Assembly: GCF_030684315.1 (NCBI RefSeq)
Contig: NC_081387.1
Coordinates: 10,684,822 to 10,748,821 of the forward strand
Direction of reading: 5' to 3'
Length of the DNA stretch: 64,000 bases
Source: Stegostoma tigrinum
Lineage: Eukaryota
This document shows, piece by piece, positions 23,115 to 48,456 of the stretch (its first letter is position 1; every line of letters begins with the position of its first letter). The position numbers were made by a program, and so were the translations under genes. A model generated the notes under the pieces. The model ran no database searches, had not been told where the DNA came from, and saw only the letters and a program-made list of their open reading frames with translations.

Positions 23115-24001
23115 TCAAATAACTGTTGTGACAGTATGTTTCACCTTGCTCTTCAATTGTTCGCTGAATTTGGACTGAGTCACCATATAAATAAATGCGT
23201 TGGTGCAACAATTTAAACTGAGCAGCATAACTGCAACTTCTGCAAAGGTATGCATAGAATCATTGTAATATTCAGGGCTAATTCCGGTAATGACATAATA
23301 TAAGAAATCTATTACATGCATAAGCCACAGGAGAATGAAGCTGCCAGATATGGTGAAGAGTAGAATCATAGACTTTCTTCTATTCTCCATCTCTGGGTCA
23401 CTGCAGTTCTGTCCCTTGCTCTGATTCCTCAGTGCTTTCCGGACTTGACTTGTCACTATAATGTACTTGACTGTCAGGGCATTGAGCAACAGAATTAAAG
23501 CATATGGGATTAATGGGGTTAAGACCTTATCAAACCAGTCAAATGCCATCCATGCAGGATCAGTGAAGTAGCTTGGCTTTAAACTGCAGAACCAGGGAAT
23601 ATTGTCAATTATCACTTCATGTTCAATTAATAAGTAGAGGGGAATGCTTTTTAAGCAGAGAAGAATGCAGGTAGTTGTCTGAATGAGGGCTGCAATTCTT
23701 CCAGTGCAATATTTTGTTTTCAGCTTCTGACAACAAATGGCCACAAATCGATCGAAGGAGAAAGTGACGGTCAGCCAGACAGAACATTCTGAGGATGCAG
23801 AAATCAGGACAAAATTAATACTGCACACAGGGGTGATGTTGAGGAATGATTCTGGGGAATAATGTGAATTAATTCTCCTTAGTATAAATGCAGTGATAAC
23901 GACCAGTAAATCTGCTGCTGCCATGGCTATCAGGTAGCGAGTGGTGCAGGTGGACAGTCCACACTTTCTTCGTGACAAGATCACAATTGCCAGTAGATTA
24001 A
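23115..24001 (-). CDS. GPR139/GPR142-like class A GPCR, gene A, exon 2 (probable G-protein coupled receptor 139-like; intact, 316 aa with exon 1)
   Basis: Acceptor ttcctggcAG at 24002. VNLLAIVILSRRKCGLS...YLIAMAAADLL...SVWLTVTFSFDRFVAIC...ILLFTISGSFILLW...LNCCTNAFIY gives a 7TM pattern with GPR139-like motifs and an open frame to TGA at 23117-23115. Confidence 0.92.
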
Positions 24002-25019
24002 CTGCCAGGAAGACAAAGGAAAACAAACTGTAAATTATTGATCAACCATTCTCTATGTTGAACCTAGGGAGTGAGGACAAATTTCTATTCCAAAAAACAG
24101 TAGCTTTGGAAGGATAGAGAATAGATATTTTCGGAAAATAAATGCAAGCATGACTTGAACTTGCCTAAATCAATGTTTAGAGTTTGGAAAAGGGCAGACA
24201 AATAACTATGCCTAAAAATTGGATGACAATTTATCATTTGGATAACATATAAAAATCTATGAGTTTACCTGAACTATATCATTTATTCTGTCTGTCATTG
24301 TTTTCCATGTTTCATCACAAATCCCAGACAAAGATACCAGGGATTATCAACTGGAAATGACTCCTGAAGCACCCTAGAAGCAGACACTCAGAAACTGGAT
24401 CATGTATCAAATCGAATAATCTATTTTTGGACATTGTGGGGTTGTAGGGGAACAATTGGGTGTTAGACAGGAGATATATGCAGCTCATTGCTCAGGAGTG
24501 TAGGTTAAGAAATGATACAAAGGACAAATGACAGACACTTAAATCATTTAATCAAGTTAAAAGATAAAGATGATCTACAAATTCAAATGATTAAACTAAA
24601 CAAAATAAAACATTCAATAAACAGACATAAAAATGTAGCAGTGTAGTAGAAATAGTTAATGGTGGATCGGCAGTTAATGACAGAGAGGTGACAAACATAA
24701 TAAATAATTGTTTGTTTGATCTTATTCTGTACCAGACTACTGAAGAAACATGGTCATGTTAAACAAAAAAAAAGCAAAATGAGCAATGAGGTAAGGATAT
24801 TTTGAATAAAAATATCATGTTTGAGAATGTGCACCAGAGTGGATGAATGAGTATAATGAGGGAAAACGGAAGTAGGGGACAAGTGGCAGAATGAATTTTC
24901 GTCTAGCATGGAGACAGAAAACAGAGCGTCTAGTCAAGAATAATTATTCCAAAGGTGAGAAGCTGTGTTTGTGAGGATCGGGGATGGCATCACATCTTTT
25001 CACAAATCGCATTAATTGT

Positions 25020-25320
25020 AGGGTAGAGGAGTCCAAAAATAAGAGGGCATAGGTTTAACGTGAGCAGATAAAGATGTAAAAGGGACCTAAGAGGCAACGT
25101 TTCCACACAGAGGGTGTATGTGTATGGAATGAGCTGCCAGAGGAATTGGTAGAGGCTGGTACAATTACAACATTTAAAAGGTATCTGGATAGACACATGG
25201 ATAAGGAGTGAAAACTGGCAAATGGCACTAAGTTTAATTTAAGATATCCAGCCAGCATGGATGAGTTAAACCAAATGGCCTGTTTCCACCCCATACAACT
25301 CTATGTCTTTATGACTCCAG
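25020..25320 (+). mobile_element. CR1 LINE 3' fragment (in gene A intron)
   Basis: GGAATGAGCTGCCAGAGGAA...ACATTTAAAAGG and tail CTCTATG. Confidence 0.8.
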
Positions 25321-26122
25321 TGATTTTGAGGCTGGAATCAAGAATCAGGTTGCAAATTTGCAGCTATCAAACAGCTAAGGAGAAGTTAGGGATAAACAAA
25401 TGAAGGAGGACAGATTCAATCACCGTAACAGTGAACTTGATGAGAAAGAAATTAAGGGCCACTGGATGAAGAAAAGATATTGTCATTGTCTGCTTGGAAC
25501 AAATTGCCACCTTTCCTGTGTTGTCTACCTGATGTTATCACTATTTACATTGAAAGCATTTTTAACAGCAAAATGCTCACTCTTTGTCATTGATTATGTC
25601 TGAAAACAACGGAGGCAAACTTCTTGAGAAAATATTGCAGAATGACATTTTATAACAAAAGGAAAAAGAAATCCTTTTCCACTCCAGGGACTTACCCACA
25701 TTCAGTATTATGCTACAGTGACCAACACTTCCTATACCTTCTCCCTCAGAGTCGCCTGTACTGATCACTGACTCTGCAGTACATTGTGCATCGCTAATGG
25801 AAATAACTGGTTCAAAATCAATAAGACTGAGAGTTACAAACATGCTTATTGTCTTTCTAAGCAATTTAACAAAACTACAAATCTATTTCATGAAATTTGA
25901 CAGATAAATTAACATATCACTGATCAGGATCTGGGTATAGATCACTGTTGGATGAATGGCATAATTATCTAATAAGACTAAAATGAAAGAATGATTTCTT
26001 ATGAATTATTTACACATTTCAACACTCAAAAAAATTCAGAAACTGTAATTAAAAATGATAAAAAAAGCTATTATTTTTCATTCCAGGAACCGACCCACAT
26101 TCAGTATAATGTAAACACTTAC

Positions 26123-26186
26123 CAGGAATGCCAATGACTGCAAGAATTGTATAATATGCTTTCTTGATAGTGAGAAGCGTTTCCAT
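26123..26186 (-). CDS. GPR139-like gene A, exon 1
   Basis: ATG at 26186; METLLTIKKAYYTILAVIGIP + G|GTAAGT donor (26122). Phase 1 joins exon 2 in frame within TM1 (GIP-V-NLL). Confidence 0.88.
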
Positions 26187-26392
26187 ATTTTTCTCTGTGA
26201 AGTGGTCTGCCCCTTGGTGCTGCTGACAATCTCTGTAAATTCGACTCTGAGGCAATATACTCACAGAGCCTCATATTTGTACTTCGTGGCATTTCCACTA
26301 GGGAATTGACATTGCACAATTGTTCAATGTAGCTTCTTTAGAGACAAGGTGAACCTAACTGCGGTAAACAATTTAACTCATTATTATGAGGG

Positions 26393-26462
26393 AATATATA
26401 TATCATTGAGATTGAATAGGACATTCGGAAAAAAAAGAGCAATTTTCATCCCATTAATTTGC
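26393..26462 (-). promoter_or_regulatory. Putative core promoter of GPCR gene A: TATATATA box plus upstream GCAAATTAATG motif
   Basis: TATA starts at 26402 on -; motif at 26462-26452. The same arrangement occurs in gene B. Confidence 0.5.
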
Positions 26463-27048
26463 TAACTCAAATTGCAAACTGCAGTCTGACAGCAATAGTT
26501 TTAATCAGCACTTCACACTGCACAAGAGGCCAGAATTCATGAAAACCTGATAATTTAGAAAGATCTGGGACTCAAGATGGTGGGTGTACGAGGTTTTAAA
26601 TTCTAGATGAAAATACGTCTGAAGAGCTAAGCTGAAGTTTAACCATAAGAGGACAGGGTGGAAGAAACAAAGAAAGAAACAAAATTGAGAGACCACAGAG
26701 AGAGAGAGAAAAATACTTGGGGGAATATTAGATCTATCCAAACCTCCCAGAAGAACAAGAGACCTGCTTGTGACCTTAACTAACCACAGTTATAAAATCG
26801 AGTGACAGATGAAATGAAAATAACAGAAATCTTTCACAGGATATGAACATAACTAGCCAGGCCAAGATTTATTGCCCATCCCTCAAAGCCCAGAGGTACT
26901 TGAGGGCCAGCCAAATTACTGTGGCTCTAGAATCACATGGAGGCCAGATTGGTGAAAACAACCAACTTCCGAAATGTACTAACTTTTTAGATCTAAAGGA
27001 TATTTATGAACCAGCAAGGTTTGCCCAAAAACCAACAATGGTTTCATG

Positions 27049-27267
27049 GTTAGTGATAATGGGAACTGCAGATGCTGGAGAATCCAAGATGACAAACTGT
27101 GTGGCTGGATGGACACAGCAGGCCAAGCAGCATCTCAGGAGCACAAAAGCTGACGTTTCGGGCCTAGACCGTTCATGAAGGGCCTAGGCCCAAAACGTCA
27201 GCTTTTGTGCTCCTGAGGTGCTGCTTGGCCTGCTGTGTTCATCTAGCTCCACACTTTGATATCTTAT
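27049..27267. mobile_element. Penelope-derived hairpin insertion
   Basis: Inverted arms meet at overlapping hammerhead-like cores; 12-bp flanking repeat AATGGTTTCATG at 27037 and 27268. Confidence 0.8.
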
Positions 27268-27799
27268 AATGGTTTCATGATTATTGTTCAACTGTTTTAA
27301 AAAATTGAATTTAAATTCCACCATCTGCTCTATCAGCATTTGTGCCCAGGCCCTCACAGAATTATCAGGGTCTTTTGACTAATAGTGTAGTGATAATGCC
27401 ACTAGGCAAGGACTCTGAGACACAACAGCAGCTGAATGCAAGGGCAACAACATAACAATGCAAGACAAAGCATCAAAGAGCAGATAAAAATATTTTCTGT
27501 ATTGTTAAGGCCGTATTGTATTTAACTGCTTAATTAACTCTTTTTAATGTGGAGAAATGTTTGATGTAGCTATACAGATGATAGTATACATGGACTTAGG
27601 CCTCCAACAGTTATTTAATAAAACACCACACACCAGATCTGGGTGAAATATTGCAGTGCAGGGAATAAGAACAGTGGAAACATAGGTATAACAATGACAG
27701 AGATAATAATCAGAGCAGTGATGAATGTTTGGTTTTCGGACTGTGGAAGGTTTATATTAAGATTTTACAGATATTGTTGTCAGGAACCTTTGTTCTTTT

Positions 27800-28390
27800 A
27801 GCCTTTATTGGCCAGTGCATCGAGTGAAGGAATTGTCATGTTGCAGCTGTACAGGCCATTAGTGAAGCCGTTCTTGGAATACTGCTATGCGAAAGGTGTG
27901 GTTAAATTTGAAAAGGTGCAGGAAACAAATACAACAATCTTTCTGGGATTGGACGGTTTAAGCTGTACGGTGAGACTGAATAGACTGGAACTATTTTCCC
28001 GAGAGCATTGGAGGCTGTTCTGAGAGAGGTTTATGAATTCATCAGGGGCACAGATATGGTAAATAGCCAGGGCCTTTTTCCCAGGGTAGAGTTGTCCAAA
28101 ACCAGAGGATATAGGTTTAAGTTTAGATAGGAAAAATATAAAAGGGACATAATCAGCAACTTTTTCACGCAAATGGTAGTGTGTATATGGAATCAGCTGC
28201 CAAATGAAGTTGTAGATGCTTGTATCATGACAACATTTAAAAGACATCTGTGCAGGTACATGAAAAGAGGAAGTTTAAAGGGATATTGGCCAAATGGTGC
28301 CAAATGGGATGATATTAATTTACGATGTCTGGTCAGCATGGACGAGTTGGAATGAAGGGTCTATTTGCATGTTTCTCACGTCTATGACTC
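27800..28390 (+). mobile_element. CR1 LINE 3' fragment
   Basis: LQLYRPLVKPFLEYC and VVCIWNQLPNEVVDA..TFKRHL match the CR1 ORF2 end. Confidence 0.85.
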
Positions 28391-30179
28391 GACAAGTTAA
28401 TGACAAAGACTCTTGTGTCTCGAGCAGAATTTCAAAATTGTGGATGCTGCAATATATTTATATTGGTTTTATACTACAATATTTATCCCTCTATCAATAT
28501 ATCAATGAAACTTGGGTGTGTTGTGAACTGTGAGGAGAATACTGTTGCATTCATCTTTAAAATGACATTGACAAATTGGTGGAATAGACAGTCAAGTGTT
28601 AGATGAAATATAATGCAAGAAAATATGAAGTGAGTAATTTTGGTAGAACGAACATGGAGACACCAAATGAAATTAAAAGGGATGAGTTTATTCCTCAGCC
28701 ATACAGGGTGCTGCTGTGATTATATCTCAAGTACTGTGCACAGCATTGGTCATCTTCTTTAAAGAATGTTTCATTAGACTAATGCCTGGAATAAGAAGAA
28801 TGTCTGATGAGGGAAGGTTAGCTAGATTTCGAGCCACTGGAGAGAAGAAGAGCAAGAGGTAATTTGATTGAAATTTATTGTCCTGAATTGTGTTTCAACT
28901 TGCAAAGAAATTGATTTTCAGACTCTAAAATATAACCCTTTACATCGTGGAGACTGCTGCATATTCCTTTGTCTCTTTAATGTTTTTATCTAGCTTTCCC
29001 TCTTCCTCTTAAATGCATCCTATTTTAAATACCAATTTGCGAATTCAAAGAGACAACATCCTTGCTTCTGTGATGATTCCAATGCATTATATAAACATAG
29101 TTGATGTGAAGCTGTCTCACAACTAATGTAGACCAAAATATGTTTTATAAGAATGTGGGATTGATCAGAGAATCAGATGACCTTATTTGTTGCTCTGAGA
29201 TGGTTGGCAGATCAGAAGAATTAGCGACAACTGTCAGTATTCCCTTAGATGGTTGTCTTCTTGATTCTGAGTCACAAGGGCACTACTGAGGGACTGCTGC
29301 AGAGTCAAATACTGATGTTCCATGAAGTTTCAAACTGACACCCTATCTCGTTGGTTATGTGAAGGTACAATATCCTATGACACTGTTTCAAAGGAAAGCC
29401 ACTGAATGTGGCTGTGTACGTGGCCAATATCTATCCCTCTATCATTATCTCAGAACAGTTGGACTGATTGTTATCTCATTTTGCAAACAAATGTGTGAGT
29501 GTGCTATATGCATATCGGTGTTATTTTTCCCAATTTACAACAGCGAGTGCACTTCAAAAGTACTTTATTGGCAGTAATGACTTTTAAGATATTAAGTGAT
29601 TGTGCGATTGTGAAAATGTTTGTGAACAAGCTTTTCTTTAAAAAAAGAACAAAAAGTGGAGTTGGAGAGACTGAGCAATGAAAATAATAGCAAAGAGACA
29701 AAAACAACAATTTAAAATGTGTAAATGTAGCCTTGGATTGAAGTTTCTATTGCATTAACAAAACAGAGACACACCATGAATAAGTATGGAAAGTGGTTCA
29801 TTATTTTCAGCTTTCTTTTCTTTTAGAGTGTTGGTGTGGGTTTGTTTGCAGGAAAATTAGTTAGTGGAAGGAACAAAAAGGAAGAGAATGTTGTGCGGGA
29901 ATTTCCTTTTTTTTGATGCTGCAGCACTTGACATTTCATTGAATTAAACACTGAAATAAGATTTTGCATCCTCTGGTTGGAAACTACCATCTGACCCAGA
30001 CAGGGACATGTATCTGCAATGTGATCAGAGCCAGGGAGCTAAATGGCACTTGAGCTTCAGTGGCAAGAATGAACCACACCTACCAGACTGTATTGCTAGC
30101 AGTGCCAATCTCTAATGGACTTGTGTGGAGCATGCTATATTAAGGAAGTCAAAAAATGCTTTGTTTTTGGCTGATTGTG

Positions 30180-30530
30180 GGTTAGAATCCCCACAGTGTG
30201 GAAGCAGGCCACGAGACCCATCACGTCCACCCTGACTCTCTCAGTGCTAGTCCAACCAGACCATGAACCTCTCCCTGTAACCCAGCATTTTGCATGCCTC
30301 ACCCACTCAGTCTGCATATCCCTGGACACCATGGCCGATTTTGCATGGCCAATTCACCTAACCTGCACATCGTTGAACTGTGGGAGGAAAGTGGAGCACC
30401 CAGAGGAAGCCCTGGAAGACATGCAGAGAATGTATAAACTCCACACAGACAGTCACCCGAGATTGGAATCAAACCCAAGTTCCTGATGTTATGAGGCAGC
30501 AGTGCTCACTGCCAAGCCACTGTGTCACCT
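30180..30530 (-). mobile_element. HE1-type SINE
   Basis: Reverse-complement match to the SINE at 21304-21625. Confidence 0.75.
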
Positions 30531-31289
30531 ATTGGAGCTACATTGTTATTTGGAGCAACTCTCCTCATAATGCCAAGTGTAATCTCTTACAGATTTTTTT
30601 TAACAAAACTTGCCCTTATTTGTGTCTGTCACATCAGACTCTCTCCCCATTTTAATACGCACCATTGCTGGAATAGCTCCACTTCTTATATGCTAAAAGA
30701 CCAGCATATCTGGTACCTGTGCTACCTTGGAAAGACCACTGTGCAGCTGGTAAGCATTAACAATATGAAGCTACTCTGCTTGGTCAAAGACAAATCTGAA
30801 CATGTCGGAGTTGGGGAAAATAATGTCACAATTCTCCAGCAGGGACTTGGAAGTCCTGGTGGAGGGAATAGTGCTAAAGATGGGTATCAGCTTCCTGAAG
30901 AGCTGGTAGAGAAGGCTGCACCACCAGACCCTCAATTCTTGGTCCATGTTTGGCATCAGTGCTGTCTCACAAGTGTGGTGTAACAGACAATAGTACTTTA
31001 AAAAGCCTTCTCTATTCCCCCATGTAAATGACACATTATTCTCACTGCTGCTTCACATATTACAAAGCAATAAAGAAGTCTGTGCTGCGCAGAACTCCAG
31101 CAGTAATTTCAGTTGAGGGGCAGAAATAAAGTTAAATAACAAAGCACCAAAAGGCCTAGTTCCACTTGCATGGCTCCGATGTTAGATTTGCAAAAGCCAA
31201 CATTTCCTCTCTGGCTAAAGACTTGAATGTACTGTCTAGTATTCATGGATACATTTCCATGACAAATAGGAAAAACAAAATCCCAGCAT

Positions 31290-31880
31290 TGCACAATGAT
31301 GCCACCCGAAGGCTGCAGGAGCAGCAACTCATATTCCGCTTGGGAACCCTGCAGCCCAATGGTATAAATGTGGACTTCACCAGCTTCAAAATCTCCCCTT
31401 CCCGCACAGCATCCCAAAGCCAGCCCAGTTCGTGCCCTCCCCCCACTGCACCACACAACCAGCCCAGCTCTTCCCCTCCACTCACTGCATCCCAAAACCA
31501 GTCCAACCTGTCTCTGCCTCCCTAACCTGTTCTTCCTCTCACCCATCCCTTCCTCCCACCCCAAGCCGCACCTCCATCTCCTACCTACCAACCTCATCCC
31601 ACCTCCTTGGCCTGCCCGTCTTCCCTGGGCTGACCTATCCCCTCCCTACCTCCCCACCTATACTCTCCTCTCCACCTATCTTCTTTTCTCTCCATCTTCA
31701 GTCCGCCTCCCCCTCTCTCCCTATTTATTCCAGAACCCTCACCCCATCCCCCTCTCTGATGAAGGGTCTAGGCTCGAAATGTCAGCTTTTGCGCTCCTGA
31801 GATGCTGCTGGGCCTGCTGTGTTCATCCAGCCTCACATTTTATTATCTTGGATTCTCCAGCATCTGCAGTTCCCATTATC
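31290..31880 (+). mobile_element. Penelope-like element 3' end (GIY-YIG endonuclease C-terminus + pseudo-LTR)
   Basis: HNDATRRLQEQQLIFRLGTLQPNGINVDF is typical of the Penelope/Poseidon ORF end; hammerhead-like core at 31756-31785. Confidence 0.85.
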
Positions 31881-34800
31881 ATTGTTATACCCTGTCTATT
31901 CGAGTTAAAACCCACTTTTAACAGGTGCTTATTAATTTGTCGGTACAATAATGAGCATTTGCAAGTGTGATATGACATTTTAATTGGACTTTCTAAACCT
32001 TCACTTCTAATGCATGCACATGTTCCTATCAATGTTTTATGCCGTCTATGTTTCATATGCGTTGTCTTTCTATTTCATTTTCAGCACTTGATCTGCTATT
32101 AAATTACCTTACACTCCTCTCATTCCTTGCATTGTATCTGTCCAAATCTGTCCAACGACGAATCAGCTTCTCTGTTCTGCCAAGTCACGGATATTTGATC
32201 AAGGTCCATCACTCAGGAAACGTCAATGAGAAAATTTGAAATAATTTTCTGAAAATTGCATCCAACTGTGTTATGTTACACTGAAACAATGGGGGGAATT
32301 GAATGTTTTGTGAGCATTGCATTAAAATGGAAATATTTGGTAAGGAGGAATATGGGAGTGGAAATAAGAAATGGGATGAAATACCTGAGAGACAGGTATG
32401 GAAAAGGTAAGAGTGGATTCGTGTGGAAAACGAGTGCGCAATGGTGAGTGGGCAATGTGGGAATAGGAGGGAGCATCAGGAAATTGTCAAAGTAAATGAG
32501 GAATGGAAAAACACAGATAGATGTTTGGATTATAAAGTAGTAGAATAGGGAACAAGGCAGTGGCAGTATGGAATGAGTGAGTCATTGAAAAAGGAGGAAA
32601 AAGAAACAGGAAGATATGAGGGAGAGTTGGAGGGGAGGGGAGGGGTTAAGTTCGGCAGAGAAGGACTATTTATTCATGATCTTTCAAAGGCAATCTACAT
32701 TGGGTCCTATTATTCCCTCCATGTTATCTCCTCCATCTGCAACTCCATATCTCTCCATAATCATCCTGGCATACACCTCTCCCTATTCTCTACCTCTACA
32801 TGTCCTAAAACTTAACTATTTCTATCAGGGACAGTCACAGTAATATTTATGTTCTCAATTGTCTCTCACGAGACAAGAAAGAATCCTTATCATCTGTGCC
32901 AACTCCTCCAGATTGAAAATGTCTCCAATATTCTGCAACCTGTTTCAGCCATTGAACTTTTCACTGTTTCAGTAATTTCTCACAGTCCACCCAAACCTGT
33001 ATCATTCAGCCTGCTCTGTGCGAATTGCCACATTTCAGGCATTACACTGGCAGCTACACTGAAGACAAAGATTACATTTTCAGAGCAGGGCAGCATTTGA
33101 TTTACTGAGGGATCTAGAAGCAAAGGCAGCAGCAATAGTTAATTGGGTCATTGAAGAGGCAGACCAGGCTCTTGTCTGCATCAGTTATGGCAGAGATTTT
33201 TGGGAGAAGGAGGGTTTTGTGGGATTTTACAGGTTATTGGTTTTCATCAGCTGAACCACAGTGTACAGTTCTGGTGACCACACAATGGAAAGGATGTGGT
33301 TTCACTGAATGGGGGGCAGAAGATATTGCCTGGATTGGAGTATTTCACCTATAACAGAGCCTTAACTTTTGTGCTCCTGAGATGCTGCTTGGCCTGCTCT
33401 GTTCATCCAGCCTCACATTTTATTACCCTTAATTAGCTGGTGTTGCTTTCTTTGGAGCAGAGAAGACTAAGTGGGTATCTGATTAACAAAGATAATGTTA
33501 TGTAGGACATGGACAAGGTGGATGGAAAACATCAGTTCTCACTAGTTGAAGGGCCAATACAAAGACGGCATAATTTCAAAGTGAGAGGCAGGAGATGTAG
33601 AGGGGATTTAGGAAAGAAAAATCACGCAGATGTTACGGGTGTCTAGAACACACTGCTTGGAGGGGTATTTGAGGTTGGAAACCTTCAAAAATCAATTAGC
33701 GGAGCAGTTGAAATCTCTCTGTCAATCACTAGAAGGTGGAAACAGAGCATTTTTGCTAGAACAGACTTCGTTGAGCCAAAGTACTTTTACAGAACTGTAC
33801 GATCCCATAATTCAATGTATCTGTACTTCAGTGCAACAACTTGGTGTAAATTATGCAGTATTTTTGAAACATTGTAGATCCATTCAGTTAAAAAAAACAT
33901 GGATTTATTCAAGTCAAATTTAGTTTCATTAATTTGATTAAATTGATTGATTTGTTCATTTATTTTTATTATGAGCAAGCGAGGAGATAATACAAGGATA
34001 CTGCAGTTTAGTGTACACCCTCTTCTGAAAACCCACATGTTAAAAAAAATCACTAAATGTGAAATGCTTAAAATAGAAATCATCAAAATCCCATTTGCTG
34101 ATAACAATAGACAAAATTCATGACATTGGAGGCAGTGTTGGTGCAAATATAGAATTCAAAACAGTACATTGATAGATTCATTGATCTGCAGCAAATCAAT
34201 TCAAGATCAATAAACATGAATCCATTCATTGCTAAAGAGGGAAAAGTTTTAAAGAGCACACATGAAATGAGGTATTGATAACATGACATTCATAACCATA
34301 CTGTTTACCCAATCATTCTTTGCCTCTCCAAATGTACGGAAGTCCGATCTTTCAGAATCACGTATAGTTGTAGAATGCAATCAACTTTTATATACACTCG
34401 CAAACCACGTCAGACATCAATGTATTTGGTGAAATGTCACATAATTGTGAAACAAATTTATTGCATCACTGAAGAAAATCTGGGTATATCTGGAAACAGA
34501 GATGAAATTTACAAACTCAGAGAATTTTTCATTCATCTCAACAGACTCAGACAAAAATCAACTGTTAAAACTGATGATGAAATTCAAACCACAGTAAAGG
34601 TTCTGAACTCAAACTTATTACAAAGAACAATGAGGATTACGTAACGTGAATCGTGCAGATACACTATCATCACCACATTAACTGCCAGCAAGGCCTTCAT
34701 CCCTTGCAACATGACTTACAGGAAATAAACAATGTTCTTCAATTGCTTATTGCAATAGAAAACAGCATTTTGTGGCACTGACAGGAAATGGACTCTACAA

Positions 34801-39400: not shown

Positions 39401-41528
39401 TATTGCTTCTTTCATCAATGACCTTAAATCTCCTGTTTCTCATTTGGCAGTTCTTTTGAGACTCCTCAGGGATTTGCATACCATGATCAAATCTCCTGTC
39501 AATCTTTACTTCTCCTTGAAAAATAATCTGAAACTTTCTAATCTATCAATTTAACTGAAATTCCTCATCTTGGAAACAGTTGCACACACCTTTCCTGCAC
39601 CATTGCTCAGCCCCTAAATTATGGTCCAAGCATTTGACACCATGCTCCACTTATGAGTGAAATAATGTGCCATACAAGTCAATGCACCGTCTTGCTTTTC
39701 TACTTTCTGCCATTTTACATGAAACATAAAAATTTGCAGGCTTCATTTACCACTTTCTTAACTTTTACTGAATTTGTTGGATATGCAGCAAAGTCCAATT
39801 GGTCCTGCAAATTTGATAAACCTACACGTTGTATCTTATTCTGTTTTCCAAAAAGCATGACAAACTTTGCACTTGTCCTCATGAAATTTCAATAACAACT
39901 TTTATTCCCATTTCTCCAACATATTTCTGTGTCTGACATGCTCCACACTGTGTACTTCAAGGTTCAAAATTCTTCCTGCTACCCTTTTGAATTCCATGAG
40001 TCATATCTTTCATCATGAGTCAGTTGCAGCGCTCTTTACAACATGCCCTTTGAAGCCCTTGTAGCTCACACAAAGCACATCACCCTCATTAATGTCGCAT
40101 CTTGATCTTAAAACAGTCTTCAGCAATATGATTAAACAGTCTGACCAGTTTTCGCCGGTGGATTTATCTTCACACATGTTTACAAGCAAGGATTCAAAAT
40201 TTGCAGAGACAGTAGGAGCTGCAGATGCTGGAGAATCTGAGATAACGAAGTGTCGGGCTGGATGAACGCAGCAGGCCAAGCAGCATTAGAGGAGCAGGAA
40301 AGCTGATGTTTCAGGCCTGGTCACAATTTGCAATTTTCCAATCACTATGCAATACCTGTGATTCGAAGTAATACTGTAATATTATGGTGAGTCCCTCAAC
40401 CATTATCGCATGTTGTCAAATGGCTTTACAGGCAGGCTGGCCAATACAATGTCCTTATTGATACCAGATATGTCGACTACTGCAATACCTTCACTTCCAT
40501 CAATAACTGGGTCACATCTCCTTCCTCAGTAAAGGGAAATTATCATTTGTGTACAAACTACAGCACAAGCAGCTTTTACAAGACTCTTGTTTTGTTCCCA
40601 ATCATTTATTTTTCCTCTTCCCAACTATGATTTTACTATTTATGTGTTGATAGAATTCTCCATCTCCAACTCAGTCTTGGGAACGCGTCCTTTCCTTCCC
40701 ATCCCACTCGTTGATGTATTTCTGTTAGTTTCACCTTTTGACCACGAGATGGCACAGGTCTAAAGTGAGAAGATGTAAAAGCGCCCAGAGAAACAATTTT
40801 TATTTCACCCAGAGGATGGTGTGTCTGAAACTGGCTGTCAGACGTATTCGTGGATATGACTACAACTTCATCATTTCAGAAGCAGTTGGAATGGATACTT
40901 CAGAAGGCAGTGGACCAGATGCAAGCAAATGGGGCTACTTTCGAAATGAAATCTGGCTAGCTGTGGAAAGTTGTGCCGAAGAGCTGTTTCCATGCTGCAG
41001 AGCTCTATTAAAGCAGTCTGTAACTTAAAATTAAGATTTTAAATATGCAACAATGCGTATGGATTGCCCATGCGCGAAGAGAAGACATTCATCGCTTAAG
41101 TTCCAGCAGTTTTATGTTGAAGTGAAAAGAGCTGAGTGTTACAGCTGGTATTGAAACCGTCTCAATTGCAGTAAAAAGTTGTGAGAAAGGAGCAGCAAAT
41201 AATTTTTAACATTTTCAAAAAAAAATTTAAATGGTTTAATAAGTAAGACTGGAAAGAAGTACGCTATTATTTCAAGCGATAGCAAACTTATTTTTGGAAG
41301 CATGTGCACACCCATTGTAATGTCAAGTCACCGAGAAAGTGAAATTTTTCTGTGAAGTCAGAGTTAACAGAAAATGAACTGGAAGACTGGTACTTAATTC
41401 TGAGTGATTGGAGTGAATTTCCTCAACAACTATCCACACTTGTTCTGACAGGTATCACGCATTTGGCCATCAAGTGTACCCAGATGTGTGGTATTTCTGC
41501 CAAATAAACTGTGTCTTGTGTCAGACGG

Positions 41529-42307
41529 TGTATCCAAGCAGTTCTTTTCCGGTTTGGGTAAATAGAATTAGGAGTAGCCTCGAACACAGCAATTTGCTTA
41601 AAAATAAATACTTATTAACTGAGAATAATGATTATAATGGCAAAAATAAAGGATAACACTGGTATAATAAATTGGAAAGGGGAAAAGAAAGCAACAATAC
41701 TCAAGGCCCTCTATAAAAAAACAAGGCTCGTGCTCTGCTGACTGTCGGGGCGCCCTCACTCGATGGCTGGCCGAGAGGCTTCGATTCGTTCTCAGCGCAT
41801 TTCACGATTCCGAGGCGAAGCGAAGTCCGGCAGCAACAGCTTGGAACGATAATTTCTCTCTTATGCAGTGTGGCAAACAGCCAGCATAAGTAAAGCAGAT
41901 ACAGCAAGACGGATCTGCTGCCTGGTACAGACCACACAAGAGGGGGAAAGACAACGAAAAAAAAACTGCAAATGCTGTAAATCGGGAACAAAACCAGAAG
42001 TTGTGAGAAAACTCAGCAGGTCTGGCAGCATCAACAAAGAAAGAAAATCTTTTGAATTAACGTTTCGAGTCGGGCGACCCTTCCTCCGAACGGGGAGAGA
42101 AAACACGTGCAGGTGTGATCTTTGGCTGGTACAGGAATATTTGCAGGACTCATTCAGGGTCATGCAGCTTTTTAAGTATTATTATAAACGTTCCCAGCAT
42201 ATCCCCCCATCCTGTCCAATCTATGCTGAATGCATCATTAACATCTGGCCCTTCGGCCCATCCTATGTTCGATATTTGAAGAGACCGCTGTTCTGAAAAC
42301 GAGCACA
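41529..42307. mobile_element. Solo-LTR-like repeat (same family as 11082-11652) with a nested Penelope-type fragment at ~41965-42100
   Basis: Shared termini and internal blocks with 11082-11652. Confidence 0.6.
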
Positions 42308-42902
42308 TCAGCTGACTGAATGGTGCAAACATTCGTATTTCTCTCATTAAAGTCGGAACGAATATGTTGTTGTGTAATAACTAAAACAACATCACATGAG
42401 GGGATTAAAATAAAAATTCAGTGACGAGATGTAAAACTGCATTTCTCTTGGCCACAGTGGTTGCAGATTGAGTAACTGCGACATCAATGAATTAGAGATG
42501 TTTCTTTTCCTTTTGAGGTATTAGCGGCTTCAGCACCGGCAGCGGATTGAATGGTCACATTCTGCACCCGGTCAGTGTCAGCGGGGGCCGCTTCAGCGTG
42601 CTTCCTCTTTGGTGTTGTGGCCTCAGAGACAGCTTTGGTGGCTGTGGAGAGAGATGCATCCCGCAGCTTCTCAGGAAATCAAAAAGCTGTGTATGGGGCA
42701 AACAATGGAAATTTGACCTAAAGTTATATAATTTGTTTCCTTCTATAATTTTTGAAATTAAAATGGTGATTTGTACATATTTTACGGCATTTTCATAAAT
42801 TCATGTGACAATAATTTACTTTTATTATTATCCTGACTGAAGACAGTAAGAAAGGCAGGACAAGATCACTTATAGAAATAATAGCTGAACATTAAGACTC
42901 AC

Positions 42903-42983
42903 TAGAACACCGGCAGCAGCAATGAGAGGATTGTAAATCTTTGCTGAATCGGCAGAGAAACGATAAAACATCAACTGATCCAT
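42903..42983 (-). pseudogene. Orphan exon 1 of a third GPR139-like gene
   Basis: ATG at 42983; MDQLMFYRFSADSAKIYNPLIAAAGVL then GTGAGT donor (42902-42897). Aligns with gene B exon 1 (EKIYYPLLGTIGVA). The donor is phase 0 instead of 1, and no matching exon 2 was found by eye. Confidence 0.65.
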
Positions 42984-43439
42984 ATTGATGAAGTGATCCA
43001 ATCCTTTTAAGGATGGAAGTTATCCTTCATCTTTATCACATTGCGTGATACAGCATACGATACAATATATGTCGCTGAAAAAATTAAAACTTTCCAGAGA
43101 TCCAACTCAGTTCTGTGGATTCTGATAAATTATCCTCAGTCAATGAAATATGACCAGGAGGAATTGTGCACTTGAAAGGCCTGAAATGATCCCAAAGTAC
43201 ACATGCCCTGAAACCAAGATAATCCTGTTTGATTGTATTCCACTCTGTGAGGTGATGATTTATTCCTTGCGGTTAACTCTGTTTTAGGAATCTCCTGGTT
43301 TGACTGAAATGACAGTCGCTGGCACTTCTGATAAAACTGAGGAATATCGGTCATGTGTAAGGGTACTCAGAGCCGATGGATTAACTGCAATTGGTGATGA
43401 AACAATGGGTCTGTAACATTGCAGAAAGTCATTTAGTAG

Positions 43440-43870
43440 ACGCCCTGTGTTTTTATGGAGAGGCTGTGTAGACTGGGGGTTTTTCTCCTTGTAGCAATGG
43501 AGGCGAAGGCGAAGAGATTTATGAAATCACGAGGCGCATGGATTGGGTGATTACTCAAGGCTTTTTTTTCCGAGGGTGGAGGAATCCAAACTCGTGGGCA
43601 TAGGTTTAAGGTAAGAGGGGAAAGAATTAAAAGAGATTCTGAGACGTAACCTTGTCACACAGAGGGTGTTGCGTGTCTGGAAAGAGCTGCCGAATGAAAT
43701 GGTAGAGGCAGGTACAATTACAACATTCAAAAGGCATCTGGATGGGGATGTGAAAAGGAAGGGTTCAGAGAGATATGAGCCAAATGCTGGCAAAAGGGAC
43801 GACATCAGATTGAGATGCCTTGAGTTAGACTAAAGGGTCTGTTTCAGTACTGCATGACTCTTCGACTCTA
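43440..43870 (+). mobile_element. CR1 LINE 3' fragment
   Basis: GAGCTGCCGAATGAAATGGTAGAGGCAGGTACAATTACAACATTCAAAAGGCATCTGGA and gactct tail. Confidence 0.8.
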
Positions 43871-45999
43871 TATGAACTGTTAATGCTCAGTCCCGTGACA
43901 ACATTCAGTCAGTTTTCTCATCCAGGAACATGTTCCCAGGATCCCTCTTCGTTTTGCAGTGTCAATGGGTAATGATGCTTTCAGTTCTGGTTTTCAAAAG
44001 AAATACATGTTCACACTTAACTGGTAGAATTAACTGCATGATCAGCCTGGAACGTCAATGGTACCGCAAGTCTTGTTCCTATCCATTTAACATGACGTTA
44101 ACTTTAATCTTTCTTGATTATGAGCCAATTTAAGGCTCAGGAACTCAATTCAGTTTGCCGTGACAAAAAGGAAATAACTTAGAGGTTCTCATGATAACTA
44201 CTATGGTAAAATTCAGAGTTTACAGAATACTTCAACAAGATGGAACAAAGTCCATTCAAAACCCTTTATTCTAAATTTCACAATTCTCACTCATTTCAAT
44301 CTTGAGCCTCATATACCCTTCGCCAAACAGGCTTCCATTATTTTAGAGGACGTTTTGCTTACCTTTGAAAAATAGAATGAGAAAGTCAAATTCAAATTCA
44401 ACATTTTAAAGACTATTGTATTCTCTGTGCTTCACATTCCAGTTCCTTCGTCTCATGCACTGATTTGTTAAAGGAAAAATCACGTGACTCTTCGAACACT
44501 CGATCCAATGATTTAAAAATCAAATTAAGTAACTTCATTGTGTTACATATCTAGATTCATCTGTTTCTTTTTTAAAGCAACGTTTTACACATGCAGTCAA
44601 TGCACCTGATTATGGAGGACGCCCGGACAGATAAAGTTAGCTACTGCAAACTGACTTCATGCAATTTGAACACGTTACGACGCGACAGCAGAGAACACCG
44701 AGTTGTTCTATACTTGCAAATATTGCATTGACCTTCCGGATTGAGAGAATTGAGTTCAATCCATTTGTTTTCAATGCTGAGATGTAACAGAAAACAGCAC
44801 AGCACAGTTGAACAAATATGCGGCGACCACTTTTAACAAAGGACAAATTCACCTAAATAAATACAGAAGTTGCCGGAGAAGTTCAGCAGATCTGGAAGCA
44901 CCTGTGAAGAGAAGTCAATGTTAATGTTTCGGGTCGGTGACCCATCCTCAAAACCGAACCTGAAGCGTTCTTTTGGACTTCTCTCCACAGATGCTGCCAG
45001 GCCTGCTGAGGTTTTCCAGCTATTTCTGTCTTTTTATTCACAGCATCCGCTGACTTACAGCGTCCGCCGTTCCTTCAGTTTTGATTAAACTCTCCGAGTA
45101 GGCAATGCAGTTTCTTCATCACCATGTTAATCTTCGATCGCACGAATTTTCATGTATCATCTTTTAAACTTCAGGATTGACCCATTATTATGTTTTAGTT
45201 CGGTACTTCAATTATATATGAATCATTTCGGAACATTTTTGAAACTCATTTCCAATTCTGGTTTCTCCTCTAATCATCTGATCAGCTGAAAGTACTTCTA
45301 TCCACATTCTCTCTACATGTAACTTCAGCATCATTCTATCCTTGGGATCCAATGTTGAGCAATTTTTGAACCCAGCAATCTTGTTTTGTTTTGTTCTATT
45401 GCTACTGAAAATGCGAAAGGGAGACCCTGGTAACTCTATATCAGTGGCCTGAGGGACACGATGTTTGTATCACCGTGCACGCGGGACAGCGGACTGGACT
45501 CTGCGAACCTGTGTCACACGTCCTGGTCAGAGAAAATTGATCAATCATTTCCGGCATGATTGATGTCCAGGTTGGGCCGGAGTGCAGTAGTGGAGTGACT
45601 GGAAGCAGACAGTGTCCATGATATGAGTATATATAAGATGCTATAAAGACCAATTTATCAATATTGAAGTATCTGATGGTGAAAAGATATACCACATTGA
45701 AATCTACACTGGTCCTGACTGAGAATAGATAGACTATACTCTGTCAGTATCATTGGGCCTAAGTGAGAACAGACAAAGCACATTATGTCTGTGTCATTGT
45801 CTCTGGAGCAGAGCAGGCTACTTTGTTGTTTCTGCATGGAAGAGGTGGGAAAGCGCACCCAATATCTGCATTATTGAAACTCCAAAATCCTATGGGGTGA
45901 CAGAGAGTTTGCTGAGAAGAATGACTGCATTTCTTGTACACAATGGTTAAGATATTAAATTAAAATTGATTTCTGATGCCTTGAGTTCATCAATGGCTC

Positions 46000-48308
46000 T
46001 CATCGGAAAATATATCTTGCAATTTGAGAAAAGGGATATTTGACCACACTCTTCAACTGCTCTCTGAATTTAGTTTGGATTATGGCATAAATGCACGTAT
46101 TTGTGCAGCAACTCAGGAGCTGAAGCATGTTTCCTAATCTGCCAACAAAATGAGGTGCAATTGCAGACACTTAACCTGAATACCATAAATGAGCCCACAC
46201 TGAAGATACAATATGTACTGCCCACAAAAATATGAAATTTCCTGAAATTGAAAATAATAAAATAATAGATTTCATTCGGTTCTCAATCTCTGTGTCTCTG
46301 TAGCTCACTGTTTTGCTCTGAGCCCGGAGTCTACTGCGTGCTTTATTGGAGACCAAAATGTGCCTGACAGTAAAACCATTGAGCAGAAGAATCACAATAA
46401 ATGGGAGACATGGAGTTACAGTGCTTTGAAGCAACTCGATTATAATCCGCTGCCATATATCAAAAACATCAAATGTTGTTTGACAAAACCAAGGTAAGTT
46501 CACAAGTAAATACCGGCCTGTGAATGAAAAGTACCACACCGTGTTTTTTTAAAAAGTTCAACACAGTCACAGTTCCAAGAACCACAGCCACAGTTTTCTC
46601 TGTGCAATACTTAGTTTTCAGTCTCTGGTAGCAAATGGCCATAAATCGATCAAACGTGAAAGTGACAGTGAACCACACTGAACAGTCTGTGGCTGCAGAA
46701 ACAAAACATGCGTGGATATTGCACACAGGTAAGGATTTCAAAAAATTAAAGCGTTTCCAATAAACAATAGGAATCTGCCTCAAGATCAGGTCGGTGATAA
46801 GCACGATTAGATCTGCTGCTGCCATGGCCACCAGATAATGACTTACACTTTGGAGAGGCCACACTTTCCCCGTGATAAGATCCCAATCGTCACTGCGTTA
46901 ACTGAAAGGAAGAGAAAAAAATCAGGTATATTAATCACCTGCTCGATATAATGCTATAAGGCTCTCTGATTAATTATAATATCCATGGAAATATATTAAT
47001 AAATCTGTCATATTGTTAACTGCTGTAAACGGGACCTGAATTAAGTAAATTCTCAATTATATCGAAGTGTTTATTTATGGGGATAAAACAAAATGGCTGA
47101 AAAGCATATTATAGATTCAATAAAATGATTGCAGTTCTGACAAATGTTTCCCTGTATTTGCAAAATAAAGAATATCATTTTCATATATAATATAGTGCAG
47201 AAGAGGTAGACTGCAATCTGATGATGCAACATTAAGCTCAATGCTGCCAGCTTAGAGTCGAAGTTAAAATTCATAAAATTCATAAAAAACATAAAATTGC
47301 ATCAAGAGAAAATATTCTCCTTGAAGTCAGATGGAAGAAGAAAATGGACAAATTTCCTGCAGTTCGAAAAGATGCATTATTGAATCAGCAAAATCTTTTT
47401 CATGCATCAAATGTTACGTTCGACTTGCACCGGCTCAGTGGTGGAGGCAGGAGCAGTGCGAACAGGATTAAGGAGAAAGCAGACTTTTATCCAAAATGGA
47501 TGAATATTCTGCAATGCACAGACAGTAAAGGTAATGATACCAATTTTACTAAATTAACTCATCATAACCTTATGTAAATAATGTCACTGATGGAAAACAG
47601 ATTTCAAGTCTTTTTTTTCAATGACGTGAGACATCTGAAGTTCTTCTTCCTGTTGACACGCAGCTATGGGTATGTACATGAAGGAGTGCACACAATAAAA
47701 TACCGAAAAATTACCTACTTCAACAAAATACCATCTTGTATTTTTTTTACAATACGGAGATAAAGTGAACAGCAAATTAGTGCTTCCACGATCTTACGGA
47801 CTCCCTGACCTGTAAAATATTTTGGCGTCATATTACATCAAATCATTGATTGGAAAGGAGTACACGGAAAGTCGAAAGTAAATACTTTTCAAGGTAAATC
47901 ACTTTTATTATGATACCACATTATAGACAGTACGAAAAATCGGTGTGATATCAAGATGCTATCGAATGAGCTGACTTCAGAAACATTAGAGTGCGGCTCT
48001 CGACACACTCTGCACACGCTTGTCTGATCAGAGAATCAAGTATCTGTTTCTTCAGATGGACATATTAACTGGTGAAACGTTGAAAGTGATGATATGCAAT
48101 TCATTCCACTCAAAATACTAAAGCAAGTTCCTCCTGAGAATTATTCGCTAGATCTATTGATGTGACATTGTAACAACAGCAACAGAATGGAATACATTAT
48201 TTAGGAATTCATGTCTGCTTCCAGAAACTTACCAGCAACACCAATAGTACCAAGGAGAGGATAGTAAATCTTTTCTATTTCAAAAATGAAGAAAAATATC
48301 TCGTCCAT
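46000..48308 (-). pseudogene. GPR139-like GPCR gene B pseudogene (exon 1 48308-48233, exon 2 46901-46000)
   Basis: Exon 1 MDEIFFFIFEIEKIYYPLLGTIGVA+G|GTAAGT. Exon 2 VNAVTIGILSRGKCGLSK..YLVAMAAADLI..SVWFTVTFTFDRFMAIC..LLSCCTNTCIYAIIQTKFREQLK..*. Lesions: 1-nt deletion at ~46848 giving an immediate TAA, +1 in the A7 run at 46550-46544, and an in-frame TAA at 46173-46171. Confidence 0.9.
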
Positions 48309-48388
48309 CACACTATAACTCGTTTTTCATCCTTGCACTTTCTGAAAAGCCGTTGATCATTATTCATGCTGGTGACATTGAAACATGG

Positions 48389-48456
48389 TTTATAAATAGA
48401 AGTGGAAATCCCTTTGGTGATTGTGATAAAATCCTTGGAGGCTGGCATTAATTTGC
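48389..48456 (-). promoter_or_regulatory. Putative core promoter of GPCR gene B: TATTTATAAA plus upstream GCAAATTAATG motif
   Basis: TATA at 48398-48389 on -; motif at 48456-48446. Confidence 0.5.

What the first reader, a model, noticed from the sequence alone, without database searches (positions are those of the whole stretch)
23115..48456. Birth-and-death array of GPR139/142-like receptors: candidate undescribed shark chemoreceptor family
Seen: three co-oriented paralogous units within 25 kb (one intact gene, one pseudogene with three lesions, one orphan exon 1). The two full units have the same phase-1 intron inside TM1, almost no N-terminus, DRF instead of DRY, no TM6 CWxP proline and no NPxxY proline (CCTNxxIY). 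Their intracellular-facing parts are conserved (CGLS, QxLKTKYCT, EMENRRKS/EIENRMKS, KFxEQLK), while ECL2, ECL3 and the outer TM halves are very divergent. Established: mammalian GPR139 and GPR142 are single-copy aromatic amino-acid sensors, and cartilaginous fishes have few canonical ORs. Inference: a conserved signalling face, a variable ligand face and rapid pseudogenisation are the signature of a sensory receptor repertoire rather than a neuropeptide receptor ortholog.
Basis: partly seen in the sequence, partly recalled or inferred. Interest (0 to 1): 0.85.

Follow-up and report, generated by a model that had tools for sequence, protein, structure and literature searches.

The report
Expanded shark GPR139-like receptor family
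This zebra shark region holds one intact gene, one broken gene and one leftover first exon of a very large, apparently undescribed shark and ray receptor family whose ligand pocket varies from copy to copy while its signalling side stays fixed, as in smell or taste receptors, although where the genes are expressed is still unknown.

Summary
On the minus strand lie an intact two-exon class A GPCR (gene A, 23115-26186, 316 codons), a paralog with three lesions (gene B, 46000-48308) and a decayed first exon (42903-42983).

Gene A is RefSeq "probable GPR139" of Stegostoma tigrinum, but it is not the GPR139 ortholog. It scores 40 bits against human GPR139.

It belongs to a shark and ray family with 110 clusters at 50% identity (E<=1e-30) and at least 64 near-paralogs in one horn shark. 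The family's nearest relative is a single-copy gene of amphibians and sturgeon.

Of 27 generic orthosteric-pocket positions, 13 are among the 30 most variable of 294 (p=7e-8). Intracellular parts are the most conserved. Two single-copy relatives show the opposite pattern.

- A and B are not recent tandem duplicates: their subfamilies each include rays or skates.
- All three B lesions are absent from about 97%-identical DNA in two other sequenced samples.

No expression data could be obtained, so a chemosensory role remains inference. No paper on the family was found. First-stage notes of this scan (unchecked) report similar clusters on other pieces of this genome.

The parts
23115..24001 (-). 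Gene A exon 2: end of TM1 through helix 8, plus the TGA stop at 23117-23115
   Evidence: ORF. Pfam 7tm_1 E=5e-23. 100% identical to RefSeq 'probable GPR139 [Stegostoma tigrinum]' P0001. AlphaFold model pLDDT 84, pTM 0.80.
24002..26122 (-). Gene A intron, phase 1, inside TM1; it contains an interspersed-repeat copy
   Evidence: GTAAGT donor and pyrimidine tract with CAG acceptor read. Repeat-like ORF at 25055-25294.
26123..26186 (-). Gene A exon 1: Met, a short N-terminus and the first half of TM1 (21 codons plus 1 base)
   Evidence: Exon-1 HMM E=1.5e-6. The start agrees with the family consensus MLETLESIEKI....
26452..26462 (-). 11-mer GCAAATTAATG, 266 bases upstream of gene A's ATG
   Evidence: One of only two exact copies in the window; both lie on the minus strand upstream of an exon 1. 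Function not tested.
40356..40403 (-). Extra 5' exon used by the RefSeq model P0001 (16 codons, GT donor); it is spliced to 26249
   Evidence: tblastn of P0001 and sequence. Not supported by the family consensus, which starts at the 26186 ATG. No RNA data were available to test it.
42903..42983 (-). Orphan, decayed exon 1 of the B type (ATG, 27 codons, then GTGAGT; one base shorter than B's, so phase 0)
   Evidence: blastn E=0.004 to B's exon 1. No exon 2 follows it.
46000..46901 (-). Gene B exon 2, a pseudogene in this assembly: frameshift next to 46847, frameshift in the run 46541-46547, TAA at 46173-46171
   Evidence: tblastn frames -2, -1, -2. Sequence. Family HMM pieces E=2e-39, 1e-33 and 1e-16. 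All three lesions are absent from contigs of two other samples.
48233..48308 (-). Gene B exon 1 (ATG, 25 codons plus 1 base, GTAAGT donor)
   Evidence: Sequence. Exon-1 HMM E=1.4e-4.
48446..48456 (-). 11-mer GCAAATTAATG, 138 bases upstream of gene B's ATG

Best explanation
The region carries two members and one relic of a very large class A GPCR family of sharks and rays.

Shown here:
- The family is a lineage-specific expansion of an old GPR139-related gene that amphibians and sturgeon keep as a single copy.
- It has split into many old subfamilies, with further species-specific bursts.
- Copies decay or exist as null versions.
- Across paralogs, the G-protein-facing half (ICL1 CGLS, DRF, ICL2 QKLKTKYCT, the end of ICL3 PEMESRRKS, helix 8 KFREQLK) is nearly fixed. 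The residues at canonical orthosteric-pocket positions of TM2, TM3, TM6 and TM7, together with ECL2 and ECL3, are the most variable in the protein.

Inferred:
- Each receptor binds a different small ligand, entering the helix bundle under a short N-terminus and an ECL2 hairpin.
- All receptors signal through one shared transducer.
- The family therefore serves as a detector repertoire for many external or internal chemical cues: olfactory, gustatory or solitary-chemosensory, or a sentinel role in other cells.

I put about 0.9 on the family description and pocket diversification. I put about 0.45 on a chemosensory role in the strict sense. The confidence given here is for the whole statement, which allows a sentinel role as well.
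For: Family size and range:
- 2108 hits at E<=1e-3. The best 120 are all elasmobranch 'probable GPR139' at 56-90% identity (most 63-72%). 64 of them come from Heterodontus francisci alone.
- 110 clusters at 50% identity reach E<=1e-30.
- The deep lineages that were named are all sharks, skates or rays.

Not the GPR139 ortholog:
- Human GPR139 scores 40.5 bits against gene A and 76 bits against the family profile.

Place in the tree:
- The elasmobranch family (SH-aLRT 91-93) is sister to the amphibian and sturgeon single-copy group. Together (100) they stand apart from a conserved orthogroup, one gene per listed species, that includes the zebra shark's own copy P0279.
- There are species-specific clades in Heptranchias, Pristiophorus and Heterodontus. 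A has a 1:1 whale shark ortholog at 90% identity.

Variability by region:
- Entropy is 1.45 bits in extracellular loops, 1.21 in outer TM halves, 0.58 in inner TM halves and 0.53 in intracellular parts (p=2.6e-15).
- The pattern is the same among 63 paralogs of one species.
- 13 of 27 pocket positions are in the 30 most variable (p=7e-8), and 5 of 6 consensus ligand-contact positions (p=4.5e-5).
- In the controls, pocket positions are at or below the TM average: 0.98 against 1.09 bits in the conserved orthogroup, and 0.27 against 0.53 in the amphibian group.

Turnover:
- B is broken here but open in two other samples.
Against: - There is no expression evidence of any kind. No RNA run holds gene A.
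- The catshark sensory-organ study found no GPCR among the 50 most specific genes of its 'brain & olfactory epithelium' library (PMC11979771). Sparse one-receptor-per-cell expression would escape such a list.
- No dN/dS could be computed, so high pocket variability could reflect relaxed constraint as well as diversifying selection.
- I drew up the list of pocket positions from memory after seeing the most variable sites, so that test is partly post hoc.
- The trees are quick searches with SH-aLRT support only, and they lack true GPR139 and GPR142.
Confidence: 0.6

Rival explanations
1. The family is an immune or sentinel-cell repertoire, expressed on leukocytes or barrier cells in the way of formyl-peptide or chemokine-type receptors. 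It would detect microbial or host-derived ligands rather than odours or tastes.
For: - First-stage notes of this scan (unchecked) report family members interleaved with T-cell receptor V segments on other pieces of this genome.
- After GPR139, the next-best solved matches of the family profile are chemokine receptors and GPR15.
- Pocket diversification fits this reading as well.
Against: - In this window the neighbour is a muscarinic M2 receptor gene, not an immune locus.
- The TCR linkage was not checked here.
- There are no expression data.
Confidence: 0.2
2. The genes are neuromodulatory brain receptors working like GPR139 itself, as amino-acid or peptide sensors in neurons. The large copy number would be a by-product of segmental duplication with little functional diversification.
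For: - GPR139 is the closest solved human receptor.
- GPR139 is a habenular sensor of L-Trp and L-Phe (PMC12208981).
- The intracellular face is strongly conserved.
Against: - The positions that align with the GPR139 ligand contacts 3.33 and 6.51 (contact residues recalled from memory) are among the most variable in the family.
- Hundreds of copies with species-specific bursts are unlike any known neuromodulator receptor.
- The single-copy relatives show conserved pockets.
Confidence: 0.1
3. Most copies are functionless passengers of repeat-driven segmental duplication. They would be open reading frames that persist for a while without expression, and the variability pattern would reflect only the general tolerance of GPCR outer halves to change.
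For: - Interspersed-repeat copies lie within and between the units.
- A pseudogene and an orphan exon sit in the array.
- dN/dS between the two B versions is 0.47.
- No RNA run was found.
Against: - Subfamilies have stayed open and recognisable in both sharks and rays.
- Intracellular motifs are nearly invariant across 118 sequences.
- A has a 1:1 whale shark ortholog at 90% identity with 92-94% identity on the inner side.
- In the single-copy controls the outer TM halves are not more variable than the inner ones, so the pattern is not a general GPCR property.
Confidence: 0.1

Closest known systems
GPR139 (and GPR142), vertebrate aromatic amino-acid-sensing class A receptors
   Same: - GPR139 is the best solved match: 40.5 bits to gene A and 76 bits to the family profile, 20 bits above the next match.
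- GPR139 also shows the highest sequence identity (22-24%) among the structural matches.
- NCBI names the shark genes 'probable GPR139'.
   Different: - The shark genes are not orthologs. Identity is low, whereas GPR139 is described as highly conserved across vertebrates (PMC12208981).
- Copy number is in the hundreds rather than one.
- Pocket positions aligned with GPR139 ligand contacts vary freely.
- The chromosomal neighbour is CHRM2.
- True GPR139 and GPR142 sequences could not be brought into the tree.
Unnamed single-copy GPR139-related gene of amphibians and sturgeon (P0244 group, RefSeq 'probable GPR139')
   Same: - It is the reciprocal nearest relative. Its next-best hits after its own group are the elasmobranch family at 32-33% identity.
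- It is the sister group in both trees.
- It also lacks P7.50.
   Different: - It has one listed protein per species in most species, with 66-74% identity among amphibians.
- It carries DRY and W-x-P.
- Its pocket positions are more conserved than its TM average, 0.27 against 0.53 bits.
Conserved GPR139-like orthogroup that includes coelacanth P0235 and zebra shark P0279
   Same: It is a GPR139-related class A receptor of about 330 residues that lacks P6.50 and P7.50.
   Different: - It is a conserved orthogroup from sharks to reptiles, with one gene per species among those placed in the tree.
- It is only about 32% identical to gene A.
- It carries ERF and has no W6.48.
- Its pocket is conserved.
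- The zebra shark keeps this gene in addition to the expanded family.
Vertebrate chemoreceptor multigene families (OR, TAAR, V1R/ORA, T2R, V2R)
   Same: - Large size, species-specific bursts, pseudogenes and null versions.
- Hypervariable pocket on a conserved signalling scaffold.
- The canonical families are small in sharks: 2 OR and 6 OR-like genes, 3 ORA, 3 TAAR, 2 TARL and about 32 V2R in the catshark (PMC11979771).
   Different: - It is not a member of any of them by sequence. Pfam gives only 7tm_1.
- It has a coding intron in TM1.
- Sensory-cell expression, the defining property, is untested.

Membership tests
Class A (rhodopsin-like) GPCR | Seven-helix fold matching Pfam 7tm_1, with D2.50, the D/E-R motif of TM3, the ECL2-TM3 cysteine pair, W6.48 and N7.49...Y7.53 | tested here: met
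   7tm_1 E=5e-23, above the curated cut-off. The AlphaFold model shows TM2-TM7, the end of TM1 and helix 8 with pLDDT 84. All top structural matches are class A receptors. D30, R84, W225, N267 and Y271 are invariant or nearly so. P6.50 and P7.50 are absent.
GPR139 orthologs | High sequence conservation with vertebrate GPR139, one copy per genome | tested here: not met
   40.5 bits to human GPR139. Hundreds of paralogs. More than 150 cluster representatives are closer to gene A than human GPR139 is.
GPR139 orthologs | [quoted passage not shown] | tested here: not met
   W6.48 is conserved. Position 3.33 (2.52 bits) and 6.51 (2.08 bits) are among the 30 most variable positions, and 5.43 has 1.90 bits. 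Numbering was inferred from motif anchors, not from a residue-level alignment to GPR139.
Wider GPR139-related clade | GPR139 is the nearest characterised receptor, by a clear margin over other class A groups | tested here: met
   Family profile: GPR139 76 bits against CCR5 56 bits. P0235: 70 against 44 bits. P0244: 53 against 40 bits. A tree with GPR139 and GPR142 themselves could not be built.
Chemosensory receptor repertoire (functional class) | Large multigene family with lineage-specific gain and loss, and pseudogenes | tested here: met
   species-specific clades; pseudogene and relic; null and open versions.
Chemosensory receptor repertoire (functional class) | Variability concentrated in the ligand pocket, with conserved transducer interface | tested here: met
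   with two single-copy control groups showing the opposite pattern. Whether selection is positive or merely relaxed was not tested, because no paralog DNA was available.
Chemosensory receptor repertoire (functional class) | Expression in sensory cells, typically one or few receptors per cell | not testable with these tools
   No RNA run holds the gene. The four runs found are genomic.
Odorant receptors (OR) proper | Match to the OR-specific profile (Pfam 7tm_4) and an intronless coding region | tested here: not met
   Only 7tm_1 is reported at E<=0.01. The coding region has a phase-1 intron in TM1.

The most novel reading that the evidence does not exclude
This family is the missing large chemoreceptor repertoire of sharks and rays. 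It would be a third, independently expanded class A odorant or tastant receptor family, after the ORs of bony vertebrates and the TAAR-like genes of lampreys. It would be derived from a GPR139-type amino-acid sensor and tuned to amino acids, their metabolites or small peptides. That would explain how animals with a handful of ORs and about 35 V2Rs achieve their noted chemical sensitivity.
Probability: 0.3. Interest if true: 0.9.

Novelty: new variant of a known kind. Interest (0 to 1): 0.72.

Why it matters
Cartilaginous fishes are described as poor in GPCRs and in olfactory receptors (PMC8455134, PMC11979771, PMC10116579). Yet their genomes hold a class A receptor family with dozens to hundreds of members per species. 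Annotation pipelines hide it under the name of a single-copy brain receptor.

Its evolutionary signature is a fixed signalling face with a free-running pocket, together with species-specific bursts and null versions. This is the signature of receptors that sample a diverse chemical world.

If the family is expressed in sensory cells, it would change the picture of shark olfaction or taste and add an independent origin of a vertebrate chemoreceptor family. If it is expressed in immune cells, it would be an unusual diversified innate sensor set.

Either way it is directly testable with tissue RNA-seq, in situ hybridisation and ligand screens.

Tried and rejected
- Expression: the look-up of sequencing runs with kind rna returned only four genomic runs of one study. 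I therefore used the single read-laying run to check B's lesions.
Only the two B versions could be compared (dN/dS 0.47 from the listed differences).
The link to GPR139 rests on searches of solved structures.
- The 'careful' tree with bootstraps did not finish in two 300-second runs. I used the quick trees under two models instead.
- Foldseek against the PDB gave only generic class A peptide-type receptors and does not discriminate.
- NCBIfam gave nothing, as expected for a eukaryotic gene.
- The supplements of the catshark paper are not held.
- Nine literature searches found no paper on this family.
- The 11-mer GCAAATTAATG with up to one mismatch is not enriched (5 found, 2.1 expected). Only the two exact copies upstream of the two exon 1s are notable, and they lie at different distances (266 and 138 bases).
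- The idea that A and B are recent tandem duplicates is rejected by the trees.
- The joined two-exon model of gene A was translated only inside scripts, to check its length and align motifs. It was never sent to a search tool; database searches used exon 2 by reference.


Full report
**What is in the sequence**

The window is zebra shark. The exon-2 translation of gene A is 100% identical to RefSeq 'probable G-protein coupled receptor 139 [Stegostoma tigrinum]' (P0001).

All units lie on the minus strand.

- Gene A. Exon 1 (26186-26123) gives a Met, about ten extracellular residues and the first half of TM1, and ends in phase 1 at a GTAAGT donor. Exon 2 (24001-23115) follows a long pyrimidine tract and a CAG. 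Joined in a script only, the two exons give 316 codons and one terminal stop. Pfam 7tm_1 scores E=5e-23.
- The RefSeq model is 352 residues because it adds a 16-codon exon at 40403-40356 and reads into exon 1 from 26249. Whether the far exon is a real leader exon needs RNA.
- Gene B. It has the same architecture: exon 1 at 48308-48233 and exon 2 at 46901-46000, with a phase-1 intron at the same codon of TM1. It carries exactly three lesions. One base is missing next to 46847, which brings TAA at 46845-46843 into frame. One base is extra in the seven-base A/T run 46541-46547. A TAA stop stands at 46173-46171.
- A third, co-oriented exon-1-like piece lies at 42983-42903: ATG, 27 codons...KIYNPLIAAAGVL, then GTGAGT. 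It is the best non-self match of B's exon 1 (E=0.004) and is one base shorter, so it would splice out of frame.
- A family HMM finds no other exon-2 remnant in the 64 kb.

Support for the orphan exon is only modest.

**The pseudogene is not broken everywhere**

No RNA run holds gene A. The four runs found are genomic, from one study and one coded organism, and hold 95-96% of the sampled words of the gene A region. I laid contigs of two of its samples on 45900-48400.

At each of the three lesion sites both samples differ from the window:

- an extra base behind 46847;
- one base fewer at 46544;
- 46171 T>A with 46172 T>C, which turns TAA into TGT.

Applying the listed natural differences gives an uninterrupted 299-codon exon 2.

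No contig identical to the window covers these sites. The divergence is patchy, 0.6-1% in parts of the intron and 3-5% in exon 2. Synonymous divergence is 0.041 and dN/dS is 0.47. That is far more than the roughly 0.2% implied for the gene A region.

I cannot tell whether this is an old null allele, a gene-conversion tract or a copy-number paralog. Any of these means active turnover at this locus.

**What the genes belong to**

- Gene A's exon 2 finds 2108 proteins at E<=1e-3. The best 120 are all elasmobranch 'probable/putative GPR139' at 56-90% identity, most at 63-72%. By my count of the names in that list, 64 come from Heterodontus francisci and 26 from Pristiophorus japonicus.
- Against one representative per 50%-identity cluster of 1.84 billion proteins, 110 clusters reach E<=1e-30.
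- Full-length relatives run down to about 38% identity. There is then a gap to 32% (coelacanth), 30% (a teleost) and 29% (a newt).
- Every representative that I could name inside the family is a shark, skate or ray. One (UniRef A0A4W3GVL1) had its organism cut off. From memory that accession block is the elephant fish, which would extend the family to chimaeras, but this is unverified.

Human GPR139 is the best solved match. It scores only 40.5 bits against gene A and 76 bits against a 50-sequence family profile, with CCR5 next at 56 bits. GPR139 is described as highly conserved across vertebrates (PMC12208981).

Two other GPR139-related groups came out of the searches.

- The coelacanth hit P0235 belongs to a conserved orthogroup from sharks to reptiles, with one gene per species among those placed in the tree. 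It includes the zebra shark's own copy, which RefSeq merges with TMEM183A.
- The newt hit P0244 belongs to a single-copy group of frogs, salamanders and caecilians plus a sturgeon. Its next-best hits are the elasmobranch family.

Two quick maximum-likelihood trees agree (LG+G4 on 112 rows; LG+C20 PMSF on 64 rows).

- The elasmobranch family (SH-aLRT 91-93) is sister to the amphibian and sturgeon group (100). Together (100) they stand against the conserved orthogroup (100).
- Inside the family, gene A pairs 1:1 with a whale shark protein (90% identity, support 100). It sits in a well-supported clade with species-specific clusters of Heptranchias, Pristiophorus and Heterodontus and an electric ray member.
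- Gene B sits in a different clade (99-100) with two other zebra shark genes, horn shark, sawshark and a skate.

A and B are therefore neighbours from two subfamilies that each include batoids. They are not products of a recent local duplication.

**Test of the 'conserved signalling face, variable ligand face' claim**

I took helix limits from an AlphaFold model of exon 2 (pLDDT 84) and measured column entropy.

| Set | Extracellular loops | Outer TM halves | Inner TM halves | Intracellular parts and helix 8 |
|---|---|---|---|---|
| 118 members of gene A's subfamily | 1.45 | 1.21 | 0.58 | 0.53 |
| 63 paralogs of one horn shark | 1.26 | 1.07 | 0.50 | 0.44 |
| Conserved orthogroup (control) | 2.02 | 1.22 | 0.99 | 1.51 |
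| Amphibian single-copy group (control) | 0.67 | 0.52 | 0.53 | 0.78 |

For the subfamily, outer against inner gives p=2.6e-15. In both control groups the outer and inner TM halves do not differ (p=0.09 and p=0.71), and the intracellular loops are among their more variable parts.

I then numbered residues from the anchors D2.50, R3.50, P5.50, W6.48 and N7.49.

- The most variable positions are 2.61, 2.65, 3.28, 3.29, 3.32, 3.33, 3.36, 6.50, 6.51, 6.59, 7.35, 7.39, 7.42 and 7.43.
- 13 of 27 generic class A pocket positions fall in the 30 most variable of 294 (p=7e-8).
- 5 of the 6 consensus ligand-contact positions do so as well (p=4.5e-5).
- In the controls the same positions are at or below the TM average: 0.98 against 1.09 bits, and 0.27 against 0.53 bits.

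Two caveats apply. I wrote the position lists from memory of the GPCR literature after seeing the variable sites. Entropy also cannot separate positive selection from relaxed constraint.

Between A and B, identity falls from 59% and 54% on the inner side to 27% and 21% on the outer side. Even between gene A and its whale shark ortholog the outer TM halves are the most changed: 82% identity against 92-94% on the inner side.

**How it most likely works**

Shown: this is a large, old and still turning-over receptor family with a fixed transducer interface and a diversified pocket.

Inferred: each member recognises a different small ligand that enters the helix bundle, and all members feed one signalling pathway. 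The short N-terminus and the ECL2 hairpin fit this. The family would be a detector repertoire.

Which cells carry it is unknown.

- A chemosensory role is the most economical reading. Sharks have very few canonical olfactory receptors (PMC11979771, PMC10116579), and the nearest characterised receptor senses amino acids (PMC12208981).
- An immune or sentinel role is a serious rival. Unchecked first-stage notes report members inside T-cell receptor V arrays elsewhere in this genome.
- In this window the next gene is a muscarinic M2 ortholog (E=1e-158).

**Comparison with what is known, and novelty**

The genes are annotated in RefSeq, so the sequences are not new. Nine full-text searches found no paper that links GPR139 with sharks, elasmobranchs or cartilaginous fishes in this sense. 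Recent shark sensory papers treat only the four canonical families. One genome paper stresses the paucity of GPCRs in cartilaginous fishes.

I file the finding as a new variant of a known kind: a lineage-specific, pocket-diversified class A receptor family. Its sensory function remains to be shown.

This scan's first stage has noted similar clusters on at least six other pieces of the same genome. This window is one sample of a genome-wide family, not a unique locus.

**Limits**

- True GPR139 and GPR142 could not be added to the trees.
- The bootstrap tree did not finish.
- The joined two-exon protein was never sent to a search tool. Searches used exon 2 by reference.

Noticed in passing
window 53002-54495 (-): A single-exon muscarinic acetylcholine receptor M2 ortholog (497-codon ORF, E=1e-158 to human M2) lies 4.5 kb beyond gene B. 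From memory, mammalian GPR139 and GPR142 lie in other gene neighbourhoods, so the receptor array would not be at either. A first-stage note claims an altered pocket with W6.48 changed to Gly; I did not check this.
   Followed up: partly
window 46572-46739: In both genomic samples the summed contig depth over B's TM3-DRF-ICL2 stretch is 10 to 28 times that of the flanks. Many paralogs in the genome are therefore at least 95% alike over this conserved segment. The tool warns that this is not a copy number.
   Followed up: no
window 45900-48400: Divergence between the window and the two other samples is patchy: 0.6-1% at 46979-47138 and 47710-48054, but 3-5% in exon 2 and at 47446-47573. This looks like gene-conversion tracts or a mosaic haplotype. 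It remains unexplained.
   Followed up: partly
window 26452-26462 and 48446-48456 (-): The only two exact copies of GCAAATTAATG in the window lie 266 and 138 bases upstream of the ATGs of genes A and B. The motif contains a TAATT homeodomain-type core. It is absent upstream of the orphan exon. With one mismatch allowed there is no enrichment.
   Followed up: partly
window 25055-25294, 27885-28247, 43551-43805 (-): Three ORF fragments share the motif ..LNVVIVPAST.S.GSSF... They are probably copies of one interspersed repeat, one of them inside gene A's intron. Such repeats could mediate unequal recombination in the array.
   Followed up: no
window 40356-40403 (-): The RefSeq model of gene A starts in a 16-codon exon 14 kb upstream, on the gene A side of the orphan exon 1, and has a proper GT donor. 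It might be a real leader exon, as in many chemoreceptor genes, or a prediction artefact.
   Followed up: partly
window 5693-6145 (-): A first-stage note places an MHC class I-like alpha-2 domain at 5676-5951. The 150-codon ORF there gave no Pfam match at E<=0.01. Other frames were not tried.
   Followed up: no
P0279 (zebra shark, another locus): RefSeq names the zebra shark member of the conserved GPR139-like orthogroup 'transmembrane protein 183A isoform X3'. A frog entry (P0377) has the same name. This is probably a read-through merge of two adjacent genes in the annotation.
   Followed up: no
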